Below, piece after piece: positions 1,312 through 24,570 of a stretch of 25,828 nt of DNA (position 1 is the stretch's first letter; each line of letters begins with the position of its first letter). The translations under genes were made by a program, and so were the position numbers. A model generated the notes under the pieces. The model was given only the letters and a program-made list of their open reading frames with translations. It did not search any database and had not been told where the DNA came from. This DNA comes from Octopus sinensis (taxonomy: Eukaryota), in the NCBI RefSeq assembly GCF_006345805.1, contig NW_021836066.1, forward strand, positions 1 to 25,828. Direction: 5' to 3'.

Positions 1312-1716
1312 TACTCTTTTACTCTTTTACTCTTTTACTTGTTTCAGTCATTTGACTGCGGCCATGCTGGAGCACTGCCTTTAATCGAGCACTCGACCCG
1401 GCACTTATTCTTGTAAGCCCAGTACTTATTCTATCGGTCTCTTTCGCCGAACTACTAAGTAACGGGGACATAAACACACCAGCATCGGTTGTCAAGCATG
1501 CTAGGGGACAAAACACAACACACACATGCATATATATATATATATATATTAACGACGGGCTTCTTTCAGTTTCCATCTACCAAATCCACTCACAAGGCTT
1601 TGGTCGGCCCGAGGCTATAGTAGAAGATACTTGCCCAAGGTGCCACGCAGTGGGACTGAACCCGGAACCATGTGGTTGGTTGACAAGCTACTTACTACAC
1701 AGCCACTCCTGCGCCT
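1312..1716 (-). mobile_element. Composite tRNA/CORE SINE (head + internal TA/TG microsatellite + 3' module), similar to octopus OR-type CORE-SINEs
   Basis: The minus strand begins AGGCGCAGGAGTGGCTGTGTAGT (A box), has GGTTCAGTCCC (B box) and the CORE-like CACCTTGGGCAAGT, and ends in (AAAAGAGT)n. Close copies lie at 2041, 21962 and 23703. Confidence 0.85.
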
Positions 1717-1726
1717 ATATACATAT

Positions 1727-6789: not shown

Positions 6790-7020
6790 TATATATATAT
6801 ATATGGTGGATGTCAGTATACCTGGTGGTATTTGGCCAGGTCTCTTTACAATCTGAGTTCAAATCCCACCCAGGTAGATTTGCCTTTCATTTTTCCATGC
6901 TTGATAAAATTGATACCAGTCAAAGTACTGGGCAGATATTTTCAACTATTGCACAGTACAAGGCTGTGCCCCAGCATGGCCAAAGTCTGATGATTAATAC
7001 AACTTAATAAAAGAAGAATT
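6790..7020 (+). mobile_element. Old diverged SINE
   Basis: ctgagttcaaatccc, gcctttcattttt, gataaaattgataccag and cccagcatggcc, as in other SINEs in this window. Confidence 0.6.
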
Positions 7021-8292: not shown

Positions 8293-8414
8293 ATATATAT
8301 ATACATACACATATATATACACATATACATATATATGTATATATGTACATGTATACACTCTAGAATCAATCAATGAAGAAGTGTGTTCAATGCTACAATA
8401 GGGGATAAATGTTC

Positions 8415-8590
8415 CTTATTTTTGGAGTAACAAGGCAACCGATGGTTTCATGTTAAAAACTCTTAACAATTATTCAAGCAAACCATTTTTTTTGAGACAA
8501 GTACCAATATTCACAAATGGGTTTACTCGAATAAGTGTAGTGATCTTTTCAACATGAAACCATTGGTTTCTTTATTAATCCAGAAATAAA
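8415..8590. mobile_element. Foldback element A; ~75-bp imperfect arms, each with a highly degenerate outward hammerhead-like motif
   Basis: 8415-8488 is the imperfect reverse complement of 8515-8590 (e.g. aaccgatggtttcatgtt vs aacatgaaaccattggtt). Confidence 0.75.
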
Positions 8591-9061
8591 TTTTATACAT
8601 ATATATACATACATATATATAAGCACATATAAATATAAATATACATATATATGTACAAGCATATATACATATATGCATAAACACTTGCACATAAGCACAC
8701 TCGCATATGTATATAAAATATATAAATATGTCTATATACATGTGTATACGTTCATTCTTATGTTAATACATCTGTAAAAAAAAAAAAGAAACATAATTAA
8801 ACATTGTCTGAACAATGGTTTTGCTCAACAGGACACATGCTTTCAATGATATATATATCTATATGTATATATATATATATATATACTGTCACCCAAAATG
8901 CTGACAGAAACCATGATGTAATTTATATGTAACCATTTACATATGAATAAAATAAACATACATCAGAAACTATTCTATTCCTTTTTTTCTTTACAGCAAA
9001 ATAAATAAAAATTTATATGCATGTATAGATGGATATATAATATATATAATATATATATATA

Positions 9062-9211
9062 TATAAACAAACATGAAAACACAAAGAGAAAACACAACAA
9101 CGCCAGGACATGGAACAAGTATTGGACGCTCAGGAAAGGTAAGAAAGAAGGAGGATTTAATGTTTCGAGCGGAGCTCTTCATCAGAAACATAGGAAAGAC
9201 GGAGGAAAAAA

Positions 9212-9215
<4 letters not shown>
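9062..9215 (-). mobile_element. Dispersed repeat family F, Penelope-like pseudo-LTR-type fragment between TA tracts
   Basis: Related copies at 11088-11190 and 15392-15545 share acgctcaggaa; this copy contains a hammerhead motif. Confidence 0.65.
9155..9189 (-). ncRNA. Minimal type I hammerhead ribozyme motif
   Basis: Minus strand reads GUUU CUGAUGA A GAGC ucc GCUC GAAA CAU U AAAU; core intact, 4-bp stems I and II, stem III vestigial. Confidence 0.7.
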
Positions 9216-9242
<27 letters not shown>

Positions 9243-9487
9243 CATACATACATTATAAGAATAAAAATTTTGGGCAGTGAGTTACCAAAGGTTTCATGTC
9301 CACAAACCCAAAGCCTTGTGGGTTGCACATCAGACTATGCAAAGACAAAAGATTTAAACTTTCTATGTCGCGGACAATGAGGAAACACTCAGAAATTGAG
9401 ATTTAAGTCTTAACATATAAAAACGGTAATGAGGACGGGTTGTCACTCCTGAACCAGAGGATAAAGCAACTCTTATAGACCCCAGAA

Positions 9488-9928
9488 AAGCCTAACCAGC
9501 AAACGGGAAGATCCAATTTCTCTGTAGGTAGAGCTTGAAGTGGACACATTTAGAAAAAAAACTAGCCTTACCAGCAAACGGGAAAATCCACTTTTTAAGT
9601 AGGTAGAGCTTGAAGTGGACACATTTAGAAAAAAACTAGCCTTACCAGCAAACGGGAAAATCCACTTTTTCAGTAGGTAGAGCTTGAAGTGGACACATTT
9701 AGAAAAAAACTAGCCTTACCAGCAAACGGGAAAATCCACTTTTTCAGTAGGTAGAGCTTGAAGTGGACACATTTAGAAAAAAACTAGCCTTACCAGCAAC
9801 GGAAAATCCACTTTTTCATTAGTAGAGCTTGAAGTGGACACATTTAGAAAAAAACTAGCCTTACCAGCAAACGGGAAAATCCACTTTTTCAGTAGGTAGA
9901 GCTTGAAGTGGACACATTTTGAAAAAAC
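9488..9928 (+). repeat. Tandem array of six ~74-bp units inside the left arm of element B
   Basis: ctagcc unit starts at 9562, 9636, 9710, 9784 and 9855; the right arm has a single copy at ~10309-10385. Confidence 0.9.
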
Positions 9929-10538
9929 TTCTTTACCACTGTTTAACATGCTGGGTTAAGTAATGTCCTTAAGAATTTTGGCTCTCTCCATGATGCAGAT
10001 TTTGCAACAGCCTCTCTCATTAATATATGGGCCTGGGTGATCAATTATATTCCACTTGATATCACGTGGGGTCCCTTGATCTTGGAGGTGCCACTCATGG
10101 CAGGCCAGGGACATGACGAACCATGTTTCTGGGACTCTGATGGAGGACTGGTGGTTGCGGAAGTGACGTTTGAAAGATGTACTGGTTGATCTGATATATT
10201 TACAAACTTGGGATGGGACTGTATTCGCATTCCTGGTGTAATGGCATCACAGAAAGGGCCAAAATTCTTAAGGACTATACTAAACCTGACACGTTAAATA
10301 GTCATAAAGAAGTTTTTTTCCTAAATGTTTCCACTTCAAGCTCTGACTACTAAAAATATTGGATCTCCCTGATTGCTGGCTATGCATTTTGGGATCTATA
10401 AGGGTTGTTTTATCCTCTGGTTTAAGGTAGACAACCCGTCCTCATTAATGTTTTTTCATGTTAAGGCTTACATCTCGATTTCTGAGTGTTTCCTCACGTC
10501 CACAATATGGAAAGTTTAAATTTTTTGTCTTTGTAAAA

Positions 10539-10595
10539 AGTCTGACGAGCTGACCACAAGGCTTTGGCTTTGAGAATATGAAACCTTTGGTAACT
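10539..10595 (+). ncRNA. Type I hammerhead-like motif, right arm of B (mirror copy at 9279-9336, minus strand)
   Basis: AGU CUGACGA ... GAAA CC uuu GGU A ACU; core, stem III and a 3-bp stem I are present, but the base of stem II pairs poorly. Confidence 0.5.
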
Positions 10596-10860
10596 CTATG
10601 TCAGAAATTAAAATTTCTGTTGTAATAATTACTGCTCTATTCTTTTAAGTGTGCTTCTTTTCTGATATGTATTTTATTGACTATATATACACATATATAT
10701 ATAGTTGAAAAGAAGTTAGGAGTCCATACAAATAAAAAATCATGGTTAAAAAATCTAAAGAAAGTTGGAAAAGCACAAAAGTATAGAATGTTTAATATTT
10801 TTGTTACAATGAGTGATTTATATATATATATATTTATGTATATATATATATATATATTTT

Positions 10861-11044
10861 AGTTTTTATTTTATTTCATCTAGTTTCAGCTCATGAGCTG
10901 TGGCCATGCTAAGGCACCACCATTTGGTGTTGCTACATAATTTTACTTCACGAATGCTTTTTAGCAATTGACATTTGGTACATGAGAGAGTTTGATGCAG
11001 CTGCCCTCATCTGCACCTCCTGCTGTGAAGTTCATTCATCTGGG

Positions 11045-11045
<1 letters not shown>
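10861..11045 (-). mobile_element. Variant SINE 3' module
   Basis: gtttcagctcatgagctgtggccatgctaaggcacc resembles the composite-SINE 3' end. Confidence 0.5.
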
Positions 11046-11087
<42 letters not shown>

Positions 11088-11190
11088 GTTAATCCAAACA
11101 AGAAAACACAGAAAAAAAGAGAAAAAAACACAGCAACGCAGGACGTGGAACAATTAAAGTATTATTGACGCTCAGGAAAGAAGGGAAATA
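11088..11190 (-). mobile_element. Truncated family F copy lacking the hammerhead
   Basis: Matches 9062-9150 and stops in a TA tract before the ribozyme segment. Confidence 0.7.
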
Positions 11191-11243
11191 TATATATATA
11201 TGTACAAACACATGGGTTTTTTTTTCAATTTTTTAATTATTTT

Positions 11244-11575
11244 ATTTGGATGGAAACATTTTAAAATCCAGTTTCAGAATCTTCTGAAGCAATGTTCTGG
11301 CAATGCCTAGTTGGGTAGAGTGATGACGGGTAGAGGCTGACGGATTGTCAAGGACACTCTGCTGTACAGCTTCCACTACTGCTTCAGTTCTTTCAGTGCA
11401 CTTAGGACCTCTTCCCAGAAGATCACTGATTGAAACCGTTCTTTCAAAACCAGGCGATTAGGTTCCAAATCATCTTATTACTAGGAGATACTCTGACAGT
11501 GAAATGTTGCCAGTACTTTCTCTGAGTTTGAATAGTTGATCTTTCACTTGAATAGGAAAACTCAACAAGTTTTAC
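11244..11575 (-). pseudogene. Decayed IS630-Tc1-mariner transposase N-terminus (DUF4817-like HTH region)
   Basis: Hand translation across a stop and a frameshift: KLVEFSYSSERSTIQTQRKYWQHFTVRVSPSNKMIWNLIAWF*KNG/SISDLLGRGPKCTERTEAVVEAVQQSVLDNPSASTRHHSTQLGIARTLLQKILKLDFKMFPSK. Confidence 0.7.
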
Positions 11576-11711
11576 TCATTGCTAGACATCAAATGTAGCC
11601 ATTTTAAGCTCCAAGAGATATTCTATAACATGCAGAAAAAAAAAAGAAAATAAAAAAGACTGAAAATGAACAAACCATGACTTTTTCAAACCCTTCCGTT
11701 TTTCAGTAGCT

Positions 11712-11731
11712 ACTCTGTATATATGTATATG

Positions 11732-11782
<51 letters not shown>

Positions 11783-12007
11783 ATGTATATATATATATAT
11801 GTATGTATGTATGTATGTATATATATGTATGTAAGTATATATATGTATGTATGTATATATATGTATGTATGTATATATATATATATATGTATGTATATAT
11901 ATATATATGTATGCATGTATTATATATATATATATATATTATATATATGTATATATATGTATATGTATGTATATATGTATATATATGTATATATATATAT
12001 GTATGTA

Positions 12008-12044
<37 letters not shown>

Positions 12045-12136
12045 GTATATATGTATATATATTTATATATATGTATGTATATATGTAGATATATATATAT
12101 ATATGTATGATATATATATGTATGTATAGATATATA
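11712..12136. repeat. (TA)n/(TATG)n cryptic microsatellite
   Basis: Directly visible. Confidence 0.95.
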
Positions 12137-13263
12137 TAACTTAGAATAACTTAGAAAGGTTTTGGCCAGTATTGGCCCAGGCCATGTCTAACTTAATAGC
12201 ACCACCTGGTGAAGTCTTTCAGTCAGGATTTGGGCACCAAGGCCTTCGAGCAGAGAGTTATTGTTTGCGGAGACATATCCGGGTGTGGGTGGTTTGTCCG
12301 GTACTGTTTGAAGGAATTTGTCCAAAGACTTCTTGAATTTTGTGTGGTCAGTTTCTTTTTGACGTGCCCTGGTGTAATGTTAAGAGAGCAGGTCCAATTG
12401 AGGTGAAATAGTTGTGCCGTATTGTCGTTATGTGATGCGATTTGATTTTTGTTGTGGACGGATGGCACGTGGTCCAAGCCTTGGATGCATTTTGAAGGTG
12501 ATGCCAACATCATTCGGACAGTGCTGGTGGAATATTTTCCACATCATACAGATAATGTAGCGTTCACGGCGTCGTTGGAGTGAATACAATTTCAGCTTCT
12601 CTAGTCTACCCCAGTAGTCAAGGTCTGACATGCCATCTATCTTTTTTGTGATTGACCTTTGAGGTGCTTCAATTCTCATAATATTTTGTTTTGTGTAGGG
12701 AGACCACAGTGGACAGCAGTATTCAAGGTGGGGTCGGGCAAAAGTGGAGAAGAGAAGGATAATAGCGTGGGAATCTCTCGACTGGAAGGTTCTGAGAATC
12801 CAGGAACACATTCTGCGGGCCATGTCAACTTTGCTGCTTATATGTGTAGCCCAGCTTATGTTGTTGTCCACTGTTACTCCCAGGTCTCTGATGTTGTTGG
12901 ATGCCATGAGAATTTCTCCAGAAGGAAGAGAGTATGGGAGTTTCAGAGCGTCCTCCCTTCCAAAGTGGATCGGTTCAAATTTGTCTTCATTTAGCAACAT
13001 GTTATTCTTTTCCGCCCATTGGACAACAGCCAGTAGGTCTGACTGAAGGTTTATTTGGTCATCCACGCCATTGATGACCTTCTGGAGCTTGGAGTCATCA
13101 GCGAAGGTTCTGATGTTACTGTGTTTGATGGTATCAGTAATATCATTTATGTAGATGATGAAGAGAAGTGGGCCCAACACAGTGCCCTGTGGGACACCAC
13201 TGCTGACTTTGGCTGGGCTGGAAGAAGAAGCTTTTCCCAAGAGCAGGTCCAATTGAGGTGAAA
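12137..13263 (-). mobile_element. 5'-truncated CR1-group non-LTR retrotransposon inserted in a TA array
   Basis: RT ORF plus a frameshifted C-terminus ([38 protein letters not shown]); 3' tail (TTCTAAGTTA)x2. Confidence 0.9.
12428..13252 (-). pseudogene. Reverse transcriptase C-terminal half (274-aa ORF)
   Basis: Motifs [23 protein letters not shown] and RPHLEYCCPLWSPY, typical of CR1/L2-group ORF2; lacks the endonuclease and the N-terminal RT. Confidence 0.92.
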
Positions 13264-13313
13264 ATATATAATATATGTATGTATATATATATGTATGTAT
13301 ATATGTATGTATA

Positions 13314-13344
<31 letters not shown>

Positions 13345-13380
13345 ATTATGTATGTATATATATATAAGTTTGTATATATG

Positions 13381-13415
<35 letters not shown>

Positions 13416-13940
13416 GTATGTATATATATATGTATGTATATATATAATATATATATGTAGATATATATATATATATGTATGTATAATGTATGTATATATA
13501 TATATATGTATATATTATTATATGTATGTATATGTATATAGATATATATATATGTATGTATATATGTATATATATATTATATGTATATATATATATTATG
13601 TATATATATTTATATATATATGTAGGTATATATGTATTATATATGTATGTATATGTTAATATATATGTATGTATATATGTATATATATATGTATGTATAT
13701 ATTTATATATATATGTATGTATAAATGTATATATATATGTATGTATATGTATATATATATATATGCATATATATATGCATATATATGTATATATATATAT
13801 ATATGTAGATATATATATATATATATTATATCTATATATATGATATATAATTATATATGTATATATATATATATATATTATATGTATATATAATATGATA
13901 TATATGTATATCTATATATATTATATATATAATATATATG

Positions 13941-13982
<42 letters not shown>

Positions 13983-14061
13983 TATATAATATATGTATAT
14001 ATATATATATGTTATATATAATATATATATATGTATATATTATATATATATAATGTATATG

Positions 14062-14095
<34 letters not shown>

Positions 14096-14133
14096 ATATG
14101 TATATATATATATATGTATATGTATAATATATG

Positions 14134-14170
<37 letters not shown>

Positions 14171-14198
14171 GTATGTATGTATATTATATATATATATG
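13264..14198. repeat. ~0.9-kb (TA)n-based cryptic microsatellite
   Basis: Directly visible. Confidence 0.95.
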
Positions 14199-14645
14199 TA
14201 TAAGGATAAATTAAATATAGAGATAATCTATTGACAATCCCCAATTTATTTATGTTACAATATTACATTAGGTACTATGGATATAATATATAACATAACA
14301 TGATATTATATAACATAAATAATTATAAAAAACAAAAAAGCTAACAAATTGTTTCGACTTATATATATATATTTTTTCTGATATACATAATCACAGTTAC
14401 ATATATAGTTACTTCAGGGTCTTTTTCTAAACCAAACACCCTGAAGTGACTATATATATAATATATATTTATATCAGAAAATATATATATAAGTCGAAAT
14501 AATTTGTTGGCTTTCTTGGTTTTTAAAATTATCTATGTTATATAATATAATATTACGTTATATAATATATTCAAAGTACTTAATGTAATATAAATATATT
14601 ATTGGATTGTCAGTAGAATATCTCTATATCTAATTTATCTTTATA
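14199..14645. mobile_element. Foldback element E, ~220-bp arms with outward hammerhead-like motifs
   Basis: taaggataaattaaatatagagata at 14201 mirrors tatctctatatctaatttatcttta at ~14619-14643; centre at ~14421-14437. Confidence 0.85.
14439..14515 (+). ncRNA. Type I hammerhead-like motif, right arm of E (mirror copy at ~14335-14426, minus strand)
   Basis: CC CUGAAGU GACU [AT-rich] AGUC GAAA U/C AAUUU GU U GG; A9 is replaced by U in both arms. Confidence 0.5.
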
Positions 14646-14794
14646 ATTGAATTATACCTATATTTATATGGTATCCAACTGAAGTACCAGTGAATTGGAT
14701 GTTTAACACACCCCTTTGAAGGATTTCTTTTCCTCAGTTTGTTAATTTATACACACACACACACACACACACCACACACATATATATATATATA

Positions 14795-15000
14795 TACATA
14801 TCTTTTATCTTTTACTTGCTTCAGACATTAGACTTCTGCCATGCTAAGACATGGCCATGGAAGAATTTTTAGTTGAATGTACTTATTTTCTTAAGCCCAG
14901 TACTTATTCTTTTGGTGTCTTTTACTGAACGACTAAGTTCTAGGGGTGTAAACACACAATCACCTGTTGTCAAGTGGTGGTGGAGGACAAACTCAGACCA
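14795..15000 (-). mobile_element. Diverged composite-SINE 3' module
   Basis: cccagtacttattc and ttgtcaag, as in 1312-1520. Confidence 0.65.
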
Positions 15001-15230
15001 TTCCCCACCCTACATGGAATGTCAATATACATGCACACACACACACACACTTAAGCACATATACGAACAAGGGATGAAAAATAGGTACAATAAAACACTA
15101 GGGGAAAAAATTGAGGAATGAAAATTAGTGATGGACATGAAGTGAGAAAAGTGAACAAGTCCATGGGTAGAACTAAGAAAAAAATTAAGAGAAAACTGGT
15201 GAAAAAATAGGGAAAAATAATTAATAATAA

Positions 15231-15540
15231 ATAGGCACAGATATGGCTGTGTGGTAAGAAGCTTGCTTCCCAACTACATGGTTCCACAGCATGGGACCTT
15301 GGGAAAGTGTTATCTACTATAGCCTCGGGCTGACCAAATCCTTGGGAGTGGATTTGGTAAAAGGAAACTGAAAGAAGCCTGCTATATATATAGGGAGAGT
15401 TTACGAAAAAATAAAAGACAAAGACAAGTGGTGTACAAAACAAACAGATGTATTAGTATAACGCTCAGGAATAGAAAAGTCTTTTACGTCTTGAGCCTTT
15501 GCTCTTCCACAGAAAAGGGACATAGAAAAAACAAGGAGAG

Positions 15541-15579
<39 letters not shown>

Positions 15580-15912
15580 CATGGATACATACATACAAAC
15601 ATACATACATTTATATATATATATATGTATGTATGTTTGTATGTATGTATGTATCCATGTATATATGTGTGTGTGTATATATGTATATATATGTGTGTGT
15701 GTGTTCGTTCTCCCATCATCACTTAACAACTGGTGTTGGTGTGTTTGTGTCCCCATTACTTAGTGGTTCAGCAAAAGAGACTGATAGAATAAGTATCAGG
15801 CTAAAAAAAAAATAAGTACTGGGTCAATGCATTTGACTAGAAATTCAAGGTGGTGCTCCAGCAAGGCTGTAGTTTAATGAATGATGCAAATAAAAGATAA
15901 AGGCAAAAGAAT
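15231..15912 (+). mobile_element. Diverged composite tRNA/CORE SINE interrupted by a family F copy
   Basis: Head at 15231-15385, F copy at 15392-15545 inside the internal TA tract, 3' module at ~15700-15912. Confidence 0.7.
15481..15516 (-). ncRNA. Degenerate family F hammerhead
   Basis: UUUU CUGUGGA A GAGC aaag GCUC AAGA CGU A AAAG; stems conserved, core mutated. Confidence 0.45.
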
Positions 15913-16494
15913 AAAACTCAGAGTATAAAAAAAATAAATATAATAAAAAAATAAATAAAATCACAATACTGGAGAAAAGTCCAAGGGGTACATAGTTGAT
16001 GCAAAGTTTGGTGGGGTAGAAATGTCCAAAGTACGGTGGGGAGCCGATGAATGAAACTTTGTAGTGTGATGCTCTTAGAGAGGCAAGCAACAGATGTGTA
16101 AGGACGTGTCAGAGCTTAAGAATTTATAATGGAAGGAAAGGAAAAGGGGAAAGTCCTGAATATCCAAAGATGATAAAAGTGGTTGAGTTCACTGGGAGGG
16201 AAATTGGGAAAAATCAGTCGGAGAGAATTTAGTCCAAATGCATGTCTTGGAGAAAGAAGTTGGTACGAATCACATGAGAAAAAAATGGTGAAGAGAAAGA
16301 AAGCTCTTTGACATAGAAGTAAAGAGAAATGGAAGCAAGGAGATAAAAAGAAAAGGACCAAGAAGAAAGTATGTGTGTGCGTGCATGCATAAGTGTGTGT
16401 GTGTGTGCTTGGAATGTTTGTGTGCGTGTGTGTTTAGGCATGTATGTGTTAGTCAGTTAAAGAGTTGTTAGCAAGAATGGTATGAAACAGAGTT

Positions 16495-17086
16495 TAAGGC
16501 GGCGAGCTGGCAGAAATGTTAGCACGCCGGGCGAAATGCGTAGCCGTATTTCGTCTATCACTATGTTCTGAGTTCAAATACTGCCGTGGTCAACTTTGCC
16601 TTTCATCCTTTCGGGGTCGATTAAATAAGTACCAGTTACGCACTGGGGTTGATATAATCGACTTAATCCGTTTGTCTGTCCTCTCTGTGTTTAGCCCCTT
16701 GTGGGTAGTAAAGAAATAGGTATTTCGTCTGCCGTTACTTTCTGAGTTCAAATTCTGCTGAGGTCGACTTTACCTTTCATCCTTTTGGGGTCGATTAAAT
16801 AAGTACCAGTTACGCACTGGGGTCGATATAATCGACTTAATCCGTGTGTCTGTCCTTGTTTGTCCTCTCTGTGTTTAGCCCCTTGTGGGTAGTAAAGAAA
16901 TCGGTATTTCGTCTGCTGTTACGTTCTGAGTTCAAATTCCGCCGAGGTCAACTTTGCCTTTCATCCTTTCAGGGTCGATTAAATAAGTACCAGTTACGCA
17001 CTGGGGTCGATATAATCGACTTAATCCGTGTGTCTGTCCTTGTTTGTCCTCTCTGTGTTTAGCCCCTTGTGGGTAGTAATGAAATA
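16495..17086 (+). mobile_element. tRNA-derived SINE (Meta-domain-like centre) with a tandemly triplicated ~180-bp body and a 16-bp TSD
   Basis: TSD GGTATGAAACAGAGTT at 16479-16494 and 17087-17102; gcctttcatcctttcggggtcgat-like motif occurs three times. Confidence 0.85.
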
Positions 17087-17347
17087 GGTATGAAACAGAG
17101 TTGTCAAGCAAAGTGGAAGTTGAGGGGGGAGGAAGAAAGCATGTGAGTGTGGTAGAAAACTTGTGTGTGTGCAAGTGTGAATGTGTGTATGAGTGCTGGT
17201 GGGTATGTGTGTATGCATCAAGGGCACAAGATGGTGATATGTGTTTGTGTGCATGTGTGTGTAGATGTGTGTGTGTGTGCATGTGAATATACTGGAGTAT
17301 TTTCATATATGCATTTATATATATATATATATATATATATGTATAAT

Positions 17348-17530
17348 GTGGAGTTGCAATGGCCCAGTGGTTAGGGCAGCGGACTCACGGTCATAGGATC
17401 GCGGTTTCAATTCCCAGATCAGGCGTTGTGAGTGTTTATTGAGCGAAAACACCTAAAGCACCACGAAGCTCCGGCAGTGGGTGGTGGAGATCCATCTGAT
17501 AGCCTGGTAGGTCATCATGATCACAGTGAT
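17348..17530 (+). mobile_element. tRNA-derived SINE, internally deleted copy of the 17820 family
   Basis: A box TGGCCCAGTGG; jumps from the gtggtgg region to catctgatagcctggt. Confidence 0.8.
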
Positions 17531-17581
17531 ATGTGTAATATTAATTAACAGGAGATGGATTCAGTATTAAACCTTTATTGG

Positions 17582-17626
17582 GTACAACATATGTTTCAAG
17601 CCATCAGTCTGGGTCTCATCAAGTAC
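17582..17626 (-). ncRNA. Degenerate type I hammerhead motif G
   Basis: GUAC UUGAUGA GACCC agacugau GGCUU GAAA CAUAUGU U GUAC; palindromic stem III ACAUAUGU and 4-bp stem I. Confidence 0.5.
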
Positions 17627-17784
17627 ATTGATAAAGACCTTTTAGTGTCAGCTGTCTTGTTATTATAAGCCCATCAAATTAGGAAATGAATAAAACCAAA
17701 TAATATTATAATACGCAATATATTATATTATATTACGCAACACTTAAACATACTACTTGACTTATATTTATTTGTCCAAATTAC

Positions 17785-17818
<34 letters not shown>

Positions 17819-17819
17819 G

Positions 17820-18118
17820 TGGAGGTGCAATGGCCCAGTGGTTAGGGCAGTGGACTCATGGTTTCGATTCTCAGACCGGGCGTTGTGAGTGTTTATTGAG
17901 CGAAAACACCTAAAGCTCCACGAGGCTCCGGCAGGGGGTGGTGGTGATCCCTGCTGTACACTTGCACCACAACTTTCTCTCACTCTTTCTTCTGTTGGCC
18001 TGCTCGCTTAGCCAGCAGGGTGGCGTCATTTGAAGGCTGAAACAACACGAAGTGCATTGTGACCAGCGATGTGTAGCAACATCTGATAGCCTGGTCGGTC
18101 ACGGTGATCACAGTGACG

Positions 18119-18120
<2 letters not shown>
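17820..18120 (+). mobile_element. tRNA-derived SINE (longer copy)
   Basis: A box TGGCCCAGTGG, B box GGTTTCGATTC, 3' gtcacggtgatcacagtga. Confidence 0.8.
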
Positions 18121-18157
<37 letters not shown>

Positions 18158-18427
18158 AAGGTGTATTCAACATGTTCAAATGCATTTGAACCTGGAAAAA
18201 CCTTCCACTACTGAGATAGTCCTGGAACAGAATTCTCTTTCCAAGCATAAGGAAAAACCTATTTTAGGCTGTGAATGATACCAGTGGATTGGAGGAAGTG
18301 TGTGTTGCTTGTATCGTTTTGATTTGTTTGCTATGAAATCCAAATCTGTTATTCATAACCTGATAAGAACAAAATTATTCTGACCAAAACAGCATACTGT
18401 ACTTATGCTGATGTGCATTATATAAAT

Positions 18428-18999
18428 AATGTCACACAAAGCAGCATTGAATAAAATATATTCATGCAAAGGTATATTTAACACATTGGAGTGTATTTGG
18501 ATGTGAGAAGAACTTCTGTGGAGATAGTCCCATGAAATGAATTCACTTCCTTCTACATGTGTGGTAACATTTTGGGCTGTGAGTGAAAACATTTGATCAT
18601 AGGACACATATGTTTCTGCATTTTATCACCTCATCAGTTGCAGAAATCATACCTGGCATTTGCGGATGGATAAGAATGAACTTATTTTTTATTAAAACAA
18701 CATACAGTACATTTGTTGATGTGCATAAAGCTTGATCAAATTAGAAATTCTTATTGGGTCGTGAATGATAAATTTGGCTTTAGTGGCTGATGAAATGAAA
18801 AAAAATGAAGAAATGCTTGCATTTTGTCATCCAATAATGTCATTTACAGCCCAAAATGTGTCTTCACATATCAAGGGAAAGAATTCTTTCCTGGGACCAT
18901 TTCCAGAGCAGAAGGTCTTCTCATGTCCGAGTGCACTTGATTGTGTTTAATGCAACTTTACAAAACTATATTTTATTTAGCACTGCTTTGTGCAATGTT
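18428..18999. mobile_element. Old foldback element H, ~210-bp diverged arms with outward CTGATGA...GAAA motifs
   Basis: Mirror pairs centred at ~18713: acattttgggctgt 18567-18580 / acagcccaaaatgt 18846-18859; cacaaagcag / ctgctttgtg; tcatcag 18631-18637 / ctgatga 18787-18793. Confidence 0.7.
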
Positions 19000-19007
19000 A
19001 CACACAT

Positions 19008-19043
<36 letters not shown>

Positions 19044-19304
19044 TATACACACATATTATACACATATGCACTCACACTCACATTATACACACATATTATA
19101 CACACATGCACACACACACACACACACATTATACACACATTATAAACACATGCACACACACACACACACATTATACACACATATTATACACACATGCACA
19201 CACACACGCACACACATTATACACACATGCACACACACCATGTATGTTTCATGCCTGTATGATGCTGAGTTCAGCCTGACTTAGTTATACCAAGTTAAGT
19301 TTTT

Positions 19305-19745
19305 TTTCTACTATAGCTTTGGGCAGACCAAAGACTTGAGAGAGGATTTGGTAGATGGAAAACTGTAAGCAACCTAATGTGTGTGTATGTGTGTGTGTAT
19401 ACACACACATAAATCCATATGTATATATGCACGCATGTATGTATGTATGTATGTATGTATGTATGTTTGTATGTGTGTGTGTATGTATGAATGTATGTAT
19501 GTATGCGTGTGTGTATGTATGTGTTGTGTGTATGTATGAATGTATGTATGTATGTATGTGTGTGTGTATGAATGTATGTGTGTGTGTGTATGTATGTATG
19601 AATGTATGTATGTGTGTGTATGTATGTATGTATGTATGTATGTATGTGTGTATGTATGTGTGTATGTATGTATGTATGTACGCATATATATATATATGGA
19701 TGAATGTATGTATGTATGTATGTGTGTGTGTATGTATGTATGTGC
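19305..19745 (+). mobile_element. Partial CORE-SINE head followed by a long (TATG/TG)n tract
   Basis: ctactatagc...gatttggtagatggaaaactg matches the other heads. Confidence 0.6.
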
Positions 19746-20921
19746 ATTTGTCCCTTTGTCCTGACATCATGTGTTGGTTTTAAACGTGGAGGAAATACTT
19801 AACAGATGAGGTTTAGGGACCAGAAATGGTATCTGGCTGTAGAAAATCTACCCCCAAAAATTCCTCCTAGCCCATCTGAGCATGAAATAGGGAATATTAA
19901 ATGTAAAGATGTTTATGATGATATCCATCTACCCTTCTCACTCACATACACACATGCAATTACACACATATATATACAAAAGCGAGTGAGAATGAGAGAG
20001 AGAGAGAGAGTGGGAGAGAGAAGAGAGAGAAAAGTAAGGGAAAGAAAGTATGTGTATATGAAAGAGACAGAAGAGAAAAAAAAATGAAAGAGTATTTTGT
20101 AATGTTTTAGTGAAATTGATGGAATTTAGAAGGTTTCAAACAAAAGTTCTACTAGATGAATGAGTGAGCTTTCCTGTGTTTTCATTAAATATTTTGTAAT
20201 ATTTATGTTGTTTAGAGCTGTTCGTTTGAAATGGTTTCAATTTATGTTTTGTGGGGCTGTTCTTTTGAAATAGTTTCAGTTTACAGTGAACTGCTCTTAT
20301 TGAATGGCTAAATTATGTTATGGATAATATCATAATAACAACTAATATTTTTGTTCATTACATTTAAGGTGGCTAGGATGGGTGTTAATGCAAGTTATTT
20401 GTTTTTTAAGACCTCTTCTACAAATGATATGATTACAGTACAGTTAAGGCATTATACAGTTGCTCATTAACAAGTCATATTCCTAGGGTGGTTGGAGTGC
20501 ATATGTATGTAGTGAAGGGATTTGTTAGATTTATGTAAAAAAGAACATAGTGTGGAACTAGGTATAGGGTGACATAGAGAAAATTAACTAGTCTCAGATA
20601 AGTTTCAGTACTAATTTCTCAGCTGATGTATATGTGAGTGCGTGTGTATGTATCTATCTCTCTCTCTCTTTTCTCTTTCACTTGTTTCAGCCATTTGACT
20701 GCAGCCATGCTGGAGCACTGCCTTTGGTCAAGCAAATCGACCCCAGAACTTATTCTTTGTAAGTCTAGTACTTATTCTATCGGTCTCTTTTGCCGAACTG
20801 CAAAGTTATGTGGATGTAAACACACCGCCATCGGTTGTCAAGTGATGTTGGGGGCAAAACACAGACACACAAACATATACACACACATACACACACACAC
20901 ACACACTATATATATATATAT

Positions 20922-21280
20922 AAAATAATATGTTACATTACTCGATAGTCAAGATAAAACTCTGAGTTTCAGATGCCAAAGTGGGAATCCACAACGCCAT
21001 CTCTTCGGTTATCTGGCTATTTGAAAATACTCTGAGTTTCAGATGCCGAAGTGGGAATCCACAACCCCATCTCTTCGGTTATCTGGCTATTTGAAAATAG
21101 CATTTTCAAATAGCCAGATAACCGAAGAGATGGCTTTGTGGATTCCCACTTCGGCATCTGAAACTCAGAGTTTTATCTTGACTATCGAGTAATGTAACAT
21201 ATTATTTTATAGATAAATTTCCTCTATTTACATAATATTGAGGTCTCTTTCTTTCTTTTGTTATCTTACCATTTTACCAA
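20922..21280. mobile_element. Foldback element C with three hammerhead-like motifs and a one-sided ~70-bp tail
   Basis: Near-perfect palindrome centred at 21099-21101; 70-bp tandem duplication in the left arm (20959 and 21029). Confidence 0.88.
21117..21177 (+). ncRNA. Type I hammerhead motif, right arm of C
   Basis: GAUAA CCGAAGA GAUG...CAUC U GAAA CU cag AGU U UUAUC; U4-to-C change in the core. Confidence 0.6.
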
Positions 21281-21863
21281 TATATATATATATATATTTA
21301 ATATATATATATGTACATATATATATATACAACAGGCTTCTTTCAGTTTCCATCTACCATATCCACTCACAAGGCTTTGATTGACCTGAGGCTATAGAAG
21401 AAGACACTTGCCCAAGGTCTGCTGCGCAGAGACCTTGCAGCGCAAGTTGAGCAAAATTGAGAGCATGATAGAAGAAGGCTTGCTCTTTATTCTGTAGAAG
21501 ACAAAATTCAAATCGGACCATGTTAACACCAAAAATTATTTACATCAAAAAGGTGCTTTTTTTCTATGAAAATCCCTATTTTTTACGATTTTTGACTGCT
21601 GTGTCACCATTTTTCGGTGTATTTCAACTGGAAAAATGTTCACTTGAAGAGAATAACAAGTTGCATAATGCAAAATTTTTACTTTCCAAAATTCCAAATC
21701 TAAAGGGTCGAAACAAACCCAAGCAACACTGGGTGATACTGCTAGTATATACATAAATTTAAAATAACATGAGTGAAAAATTGAATATTAATTTGATTAA
21801 TATCAATTTATAACCAGTGGTCTAGCATATAGAAAAATCTGAAGATTCAGAAAAATTGTATTA

Positions 21864-21914
21864 CATACATATAAGGGGGATGACCACTTAGTGGTCATCC
21901 CTCTTATATGTATG
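21864..21914. other. Near-perfect 24-bp hairpin
   Basis: catacatataagggggatgaccac-tta-gtggtcatccctcttatatgtatg; a single G-T wobble. Confidence 0.85.
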
Positions 21915-21961
21915 AAATATATATATATATATATATGTATATTGATAAAAATGGTAAGATA

Positions 21962-22357
21962 ATAGGTGCAGGAGTGGCTGTGTGGTAAGTAGCTTGCTAA
22001 CCAGCCACATGGTTCCGGGTTCAGTCCCACTGCGTGGCATCTTGGGCAAGTATCTTCTGCTATAGCCCCAGGCCGACCAATGCCTTGTGAGTGGATTTGG
22101 TAGACGGAAACTGAAAGAAGCCTGTCGTATATATGTATATATATATGTGTGTGTGTTTGTGTGTGTGTGTTTGTCCCCCTAGCATTGCTTGACAACCGAT
22201 GCTGGTGTGTTTACGTCCCCGTCACTTAGCGGTTCAGCAAAAGAGACCGGTAGAATAAGTACTGGGCTTACAAAGAATAAGTCCCGGGGTCGATTTGCTC
22301 GACTAAAGGCAGTGCTCCAGCATGGCTGCAGTCAAATGACTGAAACAAGTAAAAGAG
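21962..22357 (+). mobile_element. Composite tRNA/CORE SINE inserted into element D
   Basis: Full head to aaaagag tail; the flanks rejoin as ggtaagataacaaaagaaag, with an apparent short TAA duplication. Confidence 0.88.
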
Positions 22358-22562
22358 TAACAAAAGAAAGAAAGAGACCTCGATATTATGTAAATAGAGG
22401 AATTTATCTGTAAATGTAATATGTGACAATTATTTGGTAGTCATGATAAAACTCCGAGTGTCCGATGCCGAGGTGGAAATCCACGCTGCCATCTTTTCCA
22501 TTATCCGGCCATCGGAAAAACGCTATGAAGAATGACTGTTTATACAAATAGCGTTTTTCTGA

Positions 22563-22636
22563 TGGCCGGATAACTGAAGAGATGGCGGCGTGGATTTCCA
22601 CCTCGGCATCCGAAACTTGGAGTTTTATCATGGCTA
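22563..22636 (+). ncRNA. Type I hammerhead ribozyme, best-preserved candidate (right arm of D)
   Basis: UGGCC g GAUAA CUGAAGA GAUG...GUGG auuu CCAC...CAUC c GAAA CU ugg AGU U UUAUC au GGCUA; predicted cleavage after 22624. Confidence 0.72.
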
Positions 22637-22663
22637 CCGAAAATTGTCACATATTACATTTAC

Positions 22664-22702
<39 letters not shown>

Positions 22703-22832: not shown

Positions 22833-24570
22833 CAGGGTATGGTGCATAAATTGTCGTCTAACTTATGCAAAAATGAAAATAACACTGACATTCTTTTAAC
22901 AGATATATTTACCAAAAGTACATAAAAATATTTTGAAATACTAAAGCGTAAATTTATTCCATAAAAGCGCCATAGATTTCAACCATGGCCTCCAGACAAC
23001 TTCAGAATCTTCTGCAACTCTTCTGGATGGTCTCCTTGTTTAAGTTGACTGCCATGACCTGCATCCTTAACCCTCATGCTTTCCGAAATCCGCCGAAACT
23101 ACCTGATTATATATACACTTTAGATGAGTTGTAGTGCACCTGAGCACTGACACAACTATTATTATTTTATTATTATTATTATTATTATTATTTAAGTTGG
23201 TGAATGCTGCCATAATCCTTGCCTTCAGTTTATCTTTGGTTTACTAGGAGTTTTGTTGGTTTCTCACTCAACTGTGACCCACACATAACAATCAAGGGGT
23301 TGCAGTCTGTGGAGTTAGGTGGTCAGATGTTAGAGGTGATGTGGTCACAGAAATTGTCTGACAGCCACGACTGGGTTCTCCTGCTTGTGTGACAAAGAGT
23401 CTTCCAGCATTCTCTTGACCCAGTGCATAACATCACCATCGCTAGTGACCACTCCAAACACCATGATGTTGACTGGATGCTGGATTTTTATCACTCTTGG
23501 TACATTTTTGGGGGACACAGCAAACCAACGGTTGTTCTGTGTGTTCACTATCTGATCCTGGCAGAAATTTTTCTCATCTGAGGAAAAACCAAAGCATGTT
23601 CAGTTGGTGGGGATGCTTGAGTTTGTTCAAAAGCTCCTTAGCGCATTCTTTCCTTTTGTCCTTGGGATAAAAATTGGCCCTTTCTCATCTTGTATAAGGA
23701 ATACTCTTTACTCTCTTTTTACTTGTTTCAGTCATTTGACTGCGGCCATGCTGGAGCACCGCCTTTAGTCGAGCAAATCGACCCCGGGACTTATTCTTTG
23801 TAAGCCCAGTACTTATTCTATCAGTCTCTTTTGCCGAACTGCTAAGTGACGGGGACGTAAATACACTAGCATCGGTTGTCAAGCAATGCTAGGGGGACAA
23901 ACACAGACACATACATATATATATACATATATACGACAGGCTTCTTTCAGTTTCCGTCTACCAAATCCACTCACAAGGCATTGTTTGGCCCGGAGCTATA
24001 GCAGAGGACACTTGCCCAAGATGCCACGCAGTGGGACTGAACCCGGAACCATGTTAGCAAGCTACTTACCACACAGCCACTCCTGCGCCTGAATGTCTCC
24101 TCCTACTGAATGTCTTCATGTGCTACTTGCTTGATTAGAAATTCAGACACTCCCATGACCCTGGTGATAGACCTGATTGACTTGGAGGGATTGTTGTCAG
24201 TCATGGCTTGGAGCTCACCAACAAATTCAGGAGTCCTTTTGCTATCAGAATGATCAGAGTGACTTTTCCGAGCTGCTGTACCTTTGCAATCACCATTAGA
24301 GTCATCTAACGCTTTCCGAATTCTCTGCACTCAGATTGACACCCAAACGCTCTGAAATGTTCATAATGGCACTTCTAGTGCAGATGCCAAGCAGTACAGC
24401 ATGTCATTTCCATATTTCTGGCAGAGTGAATTGCGTCATGGTGCTATTTTTCTCACAGACAGTTCCCAACTGACCCTACTATACTGTGTAATTGACAAAA
24501 TCAAAAACAAACAATGTGCATGCATGAAATTAAAAATATAAAATGGTGACGTTTTACTCATCGCACCCTC
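22833..24570 (-). mobile_element. Decayed maT/rosa-like (DDD mariner-type) DNA transposon with both TIRs
   Basis: TIRs CAGGGTATGGTGCATAAATTGTC (22833) and the reverse complement at 24544-24570 (GAGGGTGCGATGAGTAAAACGTC), the latter followed by TA; transposase fragments RTPEFVGELQAM, SDEKNFCQDQIVNTQNNRW, IMVFGVVTSDG, PPNSTDCNP/LDCYVW with stops and frameshifts. Confidence 0.85.
23703..24090 (-). mobile_element. Composite tRNA/CORE SINE inserted in the transposase gene
   Basis: Full-length copy flanked by GAAT at 23699-23702 and 24091-24094. Confidence 0.88.

What the first reader, a model, noticed from the sequence alone, without database searches (positions are those of the whole stretch)
8415..22668. 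Recurring architecture: foldback elements carrying paired, outward-facing hammerhead ribozyme motifs
Seen: six palindromic elements (A 8415-8590, B 9252-10626, E 14199-14645, H 18428-18999, C 20922-21280, D 21941-22668) fall into five families with no similarity to each other by eye. In each, both arms read outward as stem I / CUGAnGA-like core / stem II / GAAA / short stem III / NUH / stem I, which is type I hammerhead topology. Most abut (TA)n tracts. Established: Penelope-like elements (PLEs) carry minimal type I hammerheads in their pseudo-LTRs, which can be direct or inverted, and non-autonomous hammerhead retroelements (retrozymes) exist. Inference: these look like MITEs but may be non-coding, ribozyme-bearing retroelements made of inverted pseudo-LTR pairs that favour TA microsatellites. 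I am not aware of such a class being described in cephalopods, but I cannot check this.
Basis: partly seen in the sequence, partly recalled or inferred. Interest (0 to 1): 0.9.

Follow-up and report, generated by a model that had tools for sequence, protein, structure and literature searches.

The report
Inverted Penelope-element ends with decayed hammerheads
The palindromic repeats are real and are best read as head-to-head pairs of truncated 3' ends of Penelope-like retrotransposons that carry mostly mutated hammerhead ribozyme motifs, which is a known way for these elements to insert, here seen in new families in an octopus-like genome.

Summary
All six foldbacks exist. C and D are one family, and D also holds a SINE insertion. 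No Rfam hammerhead model matches any of them, and strict descriptors find nothing.

Element B encodes a remnant of a GIY-YIG endonuclease. Its long homologues combine reverse transcriptase and GIY-YIG, the Penelope-like element (PLE) architecture. B is two 5'-truncated PLE 3' ends joined head to head.

Five B-family copies give a consensus that is a proper type I hammerhead. Each single copy carries core-killing mutations. Only D's right arm has a canonical core with all three helices. C has U4C, E has A9U, A lacks the CUGANGA strand, and H has no helix II.

A, B, C and D share a one-sided unique tail and sit inside (TA)n tracts. Both are published PLE insertion signatures.

E and H are unresolved and may be MITEs.

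Verdict: new members of a known kind, mostly ribozyme relics, not a new class.

The parts
9266..10246 (-). B, long 5'-truncated PLE copy: end of the endonuclease ORF, 3' UTR, and hammerhead relic. It has no tail.
   Evidence: Stop-free 96-aa frame at 9959-10246(-) with 401 homologues. About 75% nt identity to L001 and L025.
9959..10246 (-). Remnant of the C-terminal GIY-YIG endonuclease domain of a Penelope-like element.
   Evidence: Best hits 1.7e-17 and 1.1e-16. Pfam GIY-YIG in 6 of 35 aligned homologues. P0040 has weak RVT_1 plus GIY-YIG in one ORF.
9489..9927 (.). 74-bp tandem repeat, 6 copies. It is an expanded 3' UTR segment, present only in the long B copy.
   Evidence: TRF. The same segment is single-copy in L001, L025 and L026.
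9275..9340 (-). B_L hammerhead relic. Core is CUGAUGU (A9U) and helix II no longer closes on the core.
   Evidence: Model R1 scores it at 81.4 bits.
10250..10609 (+). B, short 5'-truncated PLE copy. It starts in the last ~25 codons of the ORF and faces outward.
   Evidence: 'ERAKILKD' is encoded on both strands. Arm alignment; match to L001.
10535..10600 (+). B_R hammerhead relic. Core CUGACGA and GAAA are intact, helix III is ACC/GGU, H17 is A, and helix II is disrupted.
   Evidence: Model R1 scores it at 89.7 bits.
10610..10675 (+). B tail: an extension of the 3' end present on one arm only.
   Evidence: Homologous sequence follows the 3' end in L001, in L025, and in the inverted copy of L019. 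It closes the gap to the (TA)n tract from 72 to 6 bp.
20922..21098 (-). C left arm, including a 70-bp tandem duplication (20959-21098). It carries two hammerhead-like units (20952-21014 and 21028-21084) with the U4C core CCGAAGA.
21102..21218 (+). C right arm. The hammerhead-like unit at 21116-21178 has core CCGAAGA, a 6-bp helix I, a long helix II, and helix III ACU/AGU.
21219..21285 (+). C tail: a one-sided extension shared with D, followed by (TA)n.
   Evidence: The gap to the microsatellite falls from 61 to 0 bp.
21941..22406 (-). D tail, homologous to the C tail and split by a tRNA-like SINE insertion at about 21962-22358.
22407..22523 (-). D left arm. The hammerhead-like unit at 22445-22505 has lost both core strands (UGGAAAA and GGAC).
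22551..22668 (+). D right arm. It holds the only unit with a canonical core (22569-22629): GAUAA CUGAAGA, a 13-bp helix II with one bulge and two mismatches, GAAA, ACU-UGG-AGU, then U and the cleavage point before UUAUC.
8359..8415 (-). Candidate one-sided tail of A, lying between the TA-rich tract and the left arm.
   Evidence: This rests on position only; no second copy is available.
8416..8590 (.). A: a short foldback with arms of about 73-75 nt. GAAACCAUYGGU resembles the B motif, but the 5' core strand is UUGAAUA / UCGAAUA, not CUGANGA.
   Evidence: A_L is the best non-self hit of the B/L019 model, at 13.5 bits and E about 0.11. nhmmer gives E = 1.9.
14199..14645 (.). E: an AT-rich foldback. 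Hammerhead-like units lie at the inner arm ends (14341-14419 minus strand, 14439-14510 plus strand), with core CUGAAGU (A9U) and helix I of 0-2 bp. Origin unresolved.
18435..18992 (.). H: an old foldback (arms 71% identical). Exact CUGAUGA sits at both inner arm ends and GAAA plus helix III is kept through two compensatory pairs, but there is no helix II. A candidate 8-bp target duplication matches at 6 of 8 positions. Origin unresolved.

Best explanation
What the foldbacks are. They are insertion scars of Penelope-like retroelements (PLEs). Each is two 5'-truncated cDNA copies of an element's 3' end, joined head to head. The two 3' ends face outward and abut the target, usually a (TA)n tract. 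One copy carries an extra terminal tail.

How the geometry arises (inferred from published biochemistry). A PLE protein nicks and extends both target strands, and it starts reverse transcription at two alternative internal sites. The tail is the stretch between those two sites.

The hammerhead words. The 3' region of these PLEs contained a type I hammerhead, so each arm shows hammerhead words reading outward. In this window nearly all of them are mutated and should be inactive. Only D's right arm keeps a canonical core.

What is shown:
- The palindromes.
- The PLE endonuclease remnant in B.
- The conserved motif and tail in independent B-family copies.
- The shared tail of C and D.
- The microsatellite setting.

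What is inferred:
- Dual-strand priming as the cause of the geometry.
- PLE origin of C/D (about 0.7), A (about 0.6), E (about 0.4) and H (about 0.3).
- Any past catalytic activity.
For: B is PLE-derived.
- A 96-aa stop-free frame has 401 homologues.
- GIY-YIG matches 6 of 35 homologues; P0146 scores above the Pfam cut-off.
- P0040 combines weak RVT_1 (residues 33-213) with GIY-YIG (residues 485-521).
- P0026 and P0146 show a YRDD / YRVD motif upstream.
- The end of the ORF is encoded on both strands.

Independent copies. L001, L025, L026 and the Octopus bimaculoides locus L019 share the 3' UTR, motif and tail. L025 and L019 also have an inverted truncated copy next to the ORF copy.

Family consensus. 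It reads AGAGU CUGAUGA G(c)UGUCCACAAGG..CUUUGUGGAUG C GAAA CCuuuGGU A ACUCU.
- It passes the descriptor with helix I 9 bp, helix II 13 bp and helix III 3 bp.
- It folds with z = -4.1.
- On 7 sequences, 78% of cells pair against 29-45% when the partners are slid. Seven pairs show double changes.

D_R and C.
- They are the only hits of the flexible descriptor.
- The true core pair ranks first of 720 permuted pairs.

Tails and setting.
- One arm ends at the microsatellite. The other arm continues for 57-70 nt and then reaches the microsatellite.
- This stretch is homologous between C and D.
- It is also homologous between B, L001, L025 and L019.

Arm identities. Arms are more alike within an element (C 98%, D 91%) than between C and D (75-80%). 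That fits each palindrome being formed at its own insertion.

Literature.
- PMC8557442: inverted 5'-truncated copies, one-sided tail, (TA)n targets, hammerhead near the 3' end.
- PMC11167929: the tail lies between two RT start sites, and the protein cleaves and extends both strands.
- PMC4209133: PLE hammerheads, including pairs on opposite strands.
Against: - No Rfam hammerhead match at any threshold tried.
- Only 2 of 13 units keep a canonical core.
- The hammerhead fold of D_R is 6 kcal/mol above its minimum-energy fold.
- The B consensus rests on five decayed copies.
- No ORF-bearing PLE sharing the ends of A, C/D, E or H could be found.
- The tails (57-70 nt) are longer than the 30-40 bp reported.
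- C and D have nearly the same inner truncation point. That fits a discrete short template better than random truncation.
- H lacks helix II and has a possible 8-bp target duplication.
- E is so AT-rich that its helices are cheap.
Confidence: 0.68

Rival explanations
1. A, C/D, E and H are ordinary MITE or foldback-type DNA transposon derivatives. Their hammerhead-like words are chance, picked out by eye from hairpin-rich, AT-rich sequence. Only B is PLE-derived.
For: - No Rfam hammerhead hit.
- The cores are imperfect in A, C, E and D_L.
- H has no helix II, and its 8-bp flanks match at 6 of 8 positions.
- TA target duplications cannot be told apart from (TA)n flanks.
- Loose core-plus-GAAA words occur about 1.3 times per kb of strand across the window.
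- MITEs and Tc1-mariner, hAT and unclassified TIR elements are annotated in Octopus vulgaris (PMC13282606).
Against: - C and D share a 70-nt extension on one side only, so the mobile unit has no terminal inverted repeats.
- The true hammerhead core ranks first of 720 decoy cores on the real sequence.
- A_L is the best non-self match of the PLE motif model, and the match spans the whole arm.
- Helix III is preserved with compensatory changes across families.
Confidence: 0.2
2. The ORF-less foldbacks derive from short, discrete, non-autonomous RNAs: a hammerhead, about 20-170 nt of 3' end, and a tail. PLE proteins mobilise them in trans. This would be a SINE-like or retrozyme-like parasite of PLEs, not random truncations of full-length elements.
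For: - Inner arm ends lie only 0-23 nt upstream of the hammerhead core in A, C, D, E, H and in the inverted copy of L019.
- C and D have almost the same arm length.
- Vertebrate non-LTR retrozymes are proposed to be non-autonomous PLE derivatives (bioRxiv 10.64898/2026.07.22.740005).
Against: - Only one family has two copies here.
- Selection bias: only arms long enough to hold the motif were flagged.
- B and L025 have longer arms that reach into the ORF.
- No transcript data are available.
Confidence: 0.22
3. The palindromes are local inverted duplications made by replication or repair errors in microsatellite-rich DNA, and are not mobile elements.
For: The window is 12.7% pure dinucleotide runs. 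C and D lie only 660 bp apart in opposite orientation.
Against: - B-family copies occur at unrelated loci and in other assemblies with the same ends.
- C/D homology stops exactly at the element ends.
Confidence: 0.04

Closest known systems
Penelope-like element insertions with an inverted 5'-truncated copy and a one-sided tail (PMC8557442; PMC11167929)
   Same: - Head-to-head truncated copies with their 3' ends outward.
- A tail on one end only.
- A (TA)n or other microsatellite target with no readable target duplication.
- A hammerhead motif near the 3' end.
- A GIY-YIG endonuclease ORF (B only).
   Different: - Most examples here are very short and have no ORF (arms of 73-220 nt).
- The tails are 57-70 nt, against the 30-40 bp reported.
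- The hammerheads are mostly mutated.
- The families come from an octopus-like genome and are not described in the papers I could search.
Minimal and variant type I hammerheads of metazoan PLEs (Cervera and de la Pena 2014, PMC4209133)
   Same: - Type I topology.
- A long helix II with an unpaired nucleotide next to the closing pair.
- A short helix III.
- High sequence variability.
- Pairs of motifs 100-700 bp apart on opposite strands, as reported in Schistosoma mansoni.
   Different: - Helix III here is a 3-bp stem with a 3-nt non-palindromic loop, not the 1-2-bp stem capped by a small palindromic loop (or no helix III at all) of the published motifs.
- The bulge sits after the first pair of helix II, not between positions 9 and 10.1.
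- Activity is untested.
Animal non-LTR retrozymes (PMC7229834; bioRxiv 10.64898/2026.07.22.740005)
   Same: Short, non-coding, hammerhead-bearing repeats thought to depend on PLEs.
   Different: Retrozymes are direct tandem repeats processed into circular RNAs. These are inverted pairs, and the only tandem piece is the 70-bp duplication inside C.
MITEs and foldback DNA elements
   Same: Small size, long inverted arms, AT-rich or TA insertion sites, and hairpin-forming transcripts that score against microRNA models.
   Different: The one-sided tail makes the unit asymmetric. No fixed target duplication was found. B encodes a retroelement endonuclease remnant.

Membership tests
Hammerhead ribozyme, type I | Invariant core: C3 U4 G5 A6 N7 G8 A9, G12 A13 A14, the A15.1-U16.1 pair, and H17 not G | tested here: inconclusive
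   Met in D_R and B_R and in the B-family consensus. Not met in B_L (A9U), C x3 (U4C), E x2 (A9U), A x2, or D_L. H x2 have the core words only.
Hammerhead ribozyme, type I | Helices I, II and III closing directly on the core, with helix I open | tested here: inconclusive
   Met, with one bulge, in D_R, in C and in the B consensus. Covariation on the B/L019 alignment: 78% paired, 7 double changes. Not met in H (no helix II). Helix I is 0-2 bp in E and A.
Hammerhead ribozyme, type I | Match to the curated Rfam hammerhead covariance models | tested here: not met
   No hit at gathering score, and none at E<=10 in six per-element scans. PLE variants with long helix II are known to need their own descriptors (PMC4209133).
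Hammerhead ribozyme, type I | Mg2+-dependent self-cleavage after H17 | not testable with these tools
   Needs in vitro transcription of D_R, C_R and the B-family consensus.
Penelope-like element | An ORF with reverse transcriptase and a GIY-YIG endonuclease | tested here: met
   Met for B only, and only the endonuclease C-terminal remnant is present. Homologues carry GIY-YIG (6 of 35), and P0040 carries RVT_1 plus GIY-YIG. A, C/D, E and H have no ORF.
Penelope-like element | 5'-truncated copies in tandem or inverted arrangement (pseudo-LTRs) | tested here: met
   B, L025 and L019 each show an inverted truncated copy beside an ORF copy. The other foldbacks have the same geometry.
Penelope-like element | [quoted passage not shown] | tested here: met
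   B tail 10610-10675 is conserved in L001, L025 and L019. The C and D tails are homologous. A is a candidate by position only. Lengths are 57-70 nt, against the 30-40 bp published.
Penelope-like element | Insertion bias for microsatellites | tested here: met
   9 of 12 boundaries lie within 23 bp of a pure dinucleotide run, against about 0.24 expected per boundary. L019 also ends in (TA)n.
MITE (DNA-transposon derivative) | Terminal inverted repeats at both outermost ends, plus a target duplication of fixed length | tested here: inconclusive
   With the tail included, B, C and D have no terminal inverted repeats. TA duplications cannot be read inside (TA)n. H has 8-bp flanks TAATGTCA / CAATGTTA, matching at 6 of 8.
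Non-LTR retrozyme | Direct tandem monomers, each with one hammerhead, expressed as circular RNA | tested here: not met
   The arms are inverted. The only tandem piece is the 70-bp x2 duplication in C. Circular RNA cannot be tested here.

The most novel reading that the evidence does not exclude
The ORF-less foldbacks (A, C/D, perhaps E and H) come from a discrete class of short RNAs that begin at the 5' edge of a hammerhead and end in the PLE tail. PLE proteins copy them in trans onto both nicked strands. This would yield a SINE-like, PLE-dependent family that repeat annotators file as MITEs. At least one copy (D_R) would still be able to self-cleave.
Probability: 0.2. Interest if true: 0.6.

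Novelty: new member of a known kind. Interest (0 to 1): 0.35.

Why it matters
- Annotation. Short palindromic repeats next to (TA)n in cephalopod genomes can be retroelement scars rather than DNA-transposon MITEs. That matters for repeat annotation and for counting Penelope-like activity.
- Dating. The arms are identical at birth, so their divergence dates each insertion.
- Mechanism. The pattern gives natural examples consistent with dual-strand priming and two alternative RT start sites, which have been seen in vitro for one lizard PLE.
- Open observation. Short arms start right at the 5' edge of the hammerhead. This is unexplained and could bear on what the ribozyme does for these elements.
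- Limits. None of this is a new kind of system, and most of the ribozyme motifs here are dead.

Tried and rejected
1. Rfam scans of the whole window and of each element found no hammerhead, only generic hairpin and microRNA-type matches.
2. A strict type I descriptor and a min-HHR descriptor both gave 0 hits, against 0.02 per shuffle. I first read this as 'no hammerheads'. I withdrew that reading once family alignments showed the descriptors were too rigid about bulges and mutations.
3. A word-indexed protein search with the B ORF found nothing. A search with translated C/D arms found nothing. A search with P0002 found only itself.
4. A metagenome scan with a C/D pattern gave 17 loci, all chance matches of 21-29 nt.
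5. An nhmmer profile of the B 3' end against the window gave only B as a significant hit; A scored E = 1.9.
6. The covariance model from B/L019 does not reach C/D, E or H, because it is too sequence-specific.
7. More distant PLE relatives from other assemblies (L022-L024) showed no descriptor hit downstream of the ORF.
8. Pfam on the interior ORF fragments of B and H, and on the 21.4-kb and 23-kb regions, gave nothing.
9. The RT ORF at 12428-13252 matched no PDB sequence.
10. A Helitron reading of C/D was rejected by eye: there are no 5'-TC or 3'-CTRR ends.
11. No C/D covariation test was run, because the five units differ too little.

Full report
**Observation.** The window is AT-rich and full of microsatellites, and it looks like animal DNA. 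All six palindromes are present. Arm identities are A 79%, B 82%, E 83%, H 71%, C 97-98% and D' about 90%. C and D are one family in opposite orientation. That SINE is inserted into a 70-nt stretch which follows only one arm of both C and D.

**First pass on the ribozyme claim.** Rfam 15 gave no hammerhead match for the whole window at gathering score. It gave none at E<=10 in six per-element scans either, only hairpin and microRNA-type matches. A strict type I descriptor found nothing. A min-HHR-style descriptor written after Cervera and de la Pena (PMC4209133) also found nothing, against 0.02 hits per shuffle. Exact CUGANGA occurs 11 times on both strands. Four of these lie in B_R, in H (twice) and in D_R. 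At this point the finding looked like pattern-matching on an inverted repeat, where any motif on one arm is mirrored on the other.

**Element B changes the picture.**
- Its interior has a 96-aa stop-free frame on the minus strand, 9959-10246.
- That frame has 401 homologues in the representative library, the best at 1.7e-17.
- Pfam GIY-YIG matches 6 of 35 aligned homologues, and P0146 scores above the curated cut-off.
- P0040 has a weak RVT_1 match at residues 33-213 and GIY-YIG at residues 485-521 in one ORF.
- P0026 and P0146 show a YRDD / YRVD motif upstream.

Reverse transcriptase followed by a C-terminal GIY-YIG endonuclease is the Penelope-like element (PLE) architecture (PMC8557442). 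The last codons of this ORF ('ERAKILKD') are encoded on both strands of B. So B is two 5'-truncated PLE 3' ends joined head to head. One is a long copy on the minus strand (9266-10246), with a 74-bp segment expanded to six copies. The other is a short copy on the plus strand, starting at about 10250.

**Independent copies.** Contigs carrying homologous ORFs could be fetched.
- L001, L025 and L026-L028 are Logan assemblies of runs SRR118693xx. They are about 67-78% identical to B at the nucleotide level.
- L019 comes from the Octopus bimaculoides assembly GCA_001194135.2 and is a related family.
- L025 and L019 again show an inverted truncated copy beside the ORF copy.
- In L001, in L025 and in the inverted copy of L019, the 3' end continues into a stretch homologous to B 10610-10675.
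- B's left arm and the forward copy of L019 stop before that stretch and run into (TA)n.

This matches the published 'tail'. The tail is an optional extension at one end only. It corresponds to the sequence between two alternative start sites of reverse transcription (PMC8557442; PMC11167929).

**The B-family motif.** An alignment of B_R, B_L, L001, L025 and L026 gives this consensus: AGAGU CUGAUGA G(c)UGUCCACAAGG-loop-CUUUGUGGAUG C GAAA CC-uuu-GG U A / ACUCU.
- Helix I is 5-9 bp and the core is canonical.
- G10.1-C11.1 closes a helix II of about 13 bp with one bulge.
- Helix III is 3 bp and the cleavage triplet is GUA.
- The consensus passes a bulge-tolerant descriptor that also finds a canonical control.
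- It folds with z = -4.1.

Each individual copy is damaged in a different place. B_L has A9U. L001 has C3U and G12A. L025 has G5A and A9U. L026 has C3G and A13G. B_R keeps the core but has lost the base of helix II. This is what decay of a once-functional motif looks like. The two states at positions 11.1-12 (UG in B, CA in L001 and L026) are the two products expected from a CpG; this point is inference.

With the two L019 copies added, 78% of cells pair on the hammerhead structure, against 29-45% when the partners are slid. Seven pairs have changes on both sides, and only 7 of 500 shuffles reach the observed pairing. Helix I covaries between the two L019 copies: UUUAUGG/CCAUAAA against UUUGGGG/CCCCA(C)AAA.

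**C/D.** D_R (22569-22629) reads GAUAA CUGAAGA [GAUG.CGG.GUGG auuu CCAC.UCG.CAU(c)C] GAAA CU-ugg-AG U U / UUAUC.
- Every invariant core position is canonical.
- Helix I is 5 bp and helix III is 3 bp.
- Helix II is long, with one bulged C next to the closing pair and two mismatches.
- The three C units are the same except for U4C, which should be inactivating. D_L has lost both core strands.

I also ran a test that keeps the real sequence and its hairpins. Among 720 permuted core word pairs laid on about 26,000 three-way-junction scaffolds, the true CUGANGA/GAAA pair ranks first, with 3 hits against a mean of 0.10. Only 4 of 720 pairs have an exact hit. The three hits belong to one family, so this counts as one event, with p of about 0.006.

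The hammerhead fold of D_R is -11.0 kcal/mol against a minimum of -16.9. A transcript across a whole foldback would form a hairpin of about -200 kcal/mol. The pairing of two outward motifs is therefore a by-product of geometry and not a working design.

**Anatomy shared by A, B, C and D.** One arm ends directly at the microsatellite. The other arm continues for 57-70 unique nt and then meets the microsatellite. Counting the tail shrinks the gap to the nearest pure dinucleotide run: B from 72 to 6 bp, C from 61 to 0, D from 237 to 4, and A from 79 to 22. Overall, 9 of 12 boundaries lie within 23 bp of such a run, against about 0.24 expected per boundary in this window.

With the tail included, the unit has no terminal inverted repeats, which argues against a DNA-transposon MITE. 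Arms are more alike within an element (C 98%, D 91%) than between C and D (75-80%). That fits palindromes formed at each insertion. The published finding that a PLE protein cleaves and extends both target strands (PMC11167929) offers a mechanism: two cDNAs primed from the two nicks and meeting head to head. That step is my inference.

**A, E and H.**
- A shares AUGAAACC(A/U)UUGGU and the CCAAAAAU-type end with B. Its left arm is the best non-self hit of the covariance model built from B/L019, at 13.5 bits and E about 0.11, and the match spans the whole arm. Its 5' core strand is UUGAAUA, and nhmmer gives only E = 1.9.
- E has CUGAAGU (A9U) on both arms, a G-C-closed AU-rich helix II in E_R, a 3-bp helix III, and almost no helix I. 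In such AT-rich sequence this is weak evidence.
- H has exact CUGAUGA at both inner arm ends. GAAA plus helix III is kept through two compensatory pairs (ACA/UGU against AUG/CAU). But no helix II exists, and the core folds into another hairpin. Its flanks TAATGTCA / CAATGTTA match at 6 of 8 positions, so a hAT-like MITE is not excluded.

No further copies of A, C/D, E or H could be obtained.

**An unexplained regularity.** In A, C, D, E, H and the inverted copy of L019, the inner end of the arm lies 0-23 nt upstream of the hammerhead core. B_R and L025 reach further, into the ORF. Selection bias may contribute. Alternatively, the template may be a short RNA that begins at the hammerhead.

**Comparison with what is known.**
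- Hammerheads in PLE flanking repeats are published, including pairs 100-700 bp apart on opposite strands (PMC4209133).
- Inverted truncated copies, tails and (TA)n targets are published (PMC8557442, PMC11167929).
- PLEs are annotated in Octopus (PMC13282606).
- 235 Hammerhead_1 loci were reported in the giant squid genome (PMC6962438).
- Vertebrate retrozymes are proposed to be PLE derivatives.
- I found no paper describing these octopus families or their hammerheads.

**Verdict.** What is here is a set of new members of a known kind, mostly ribozyme relics. E and H remain undecided.

Noticed in passing
window 21063-21137 (centre of C), both strands: The hairpin at the centre of C scores 57.3 and 56.4 bits against Rfam mir-9/mir-79, whose gathering score is 58.6. 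One arm reads UCUUCGGUUAUCUGGCUAUUUGA, which by eye is 19 of 23 identical to what I recall as the miR-9-5p sequence, with a mismatch in the seed. D' is much less similar, so this is probably chance on a perfect hairpin.
   Followed up: partly
window 1510-1725, 2033-2248, 20653-20859, 21300-21416, ~21962-22358, ~23700-24075: Several copies of a SINE of about 390 nt with a tRNA-like head (GGTGCAGGAGTGGCTGTGTGGTAAG...GGTTCCGGGTTCAGTCC). ARAGORN calls no tRNA. One copy is inserted into the tail of D, with a possible 3-bp TAA duplication. Octopus tRNA-derived SINEs are known from the literature (cited in PMC4758252).
   Followed up: partly
window 12428-13252 (-): A 274-aa ORF with Pfam RVT_1 (7.6e-10) and an FADD motif. 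No GIY-YIG lies downstream and there is no PDB match. It looks like a LINE-type RT fragment unrelated to the foldbacks.
   Followed up: partly
window 16546-17091: A 184-bp unit repeated three times at 90% identity. About 50 nt of the unit also occurs at 81-89% identity in the Octopus bimaculoides locus L019 (1634-1695) and at window 6843-6903.
   Followed up: no
window 9489-9927: A 74-bp tandem array (6 copies, 95% identity) inside the long B copy. The unit is a single-copy part of the 3' UTR in the other B-family copies, so the array expanded after insertion or in the source copy.
   Followed up: partly
window 21858-21920: A small, near-perfect palindrome (tacatataagggggatgaccac ttag tggtcatccctcttatatgta) between C and D, next to (TA)n. 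No family was assigned.
   Followed up: no
A, C, D, E and H inner arm ends; L019 2875-2882: Short inverted arms begin 0-23 nt upstream of the hammerhead core in six of eight cases. This suggests a preferred 5' end of the template or cDNA at the edge of the ribozyme. It is unexplained.
   Followed up: partly
window 23348-23599 (-) and 24106-24330 (-): Stop-free frames of 84 and 75 aa flank a SINE. They have no Pfam hit and may be a decayed gene or transposase fragment.
   Followed up: no
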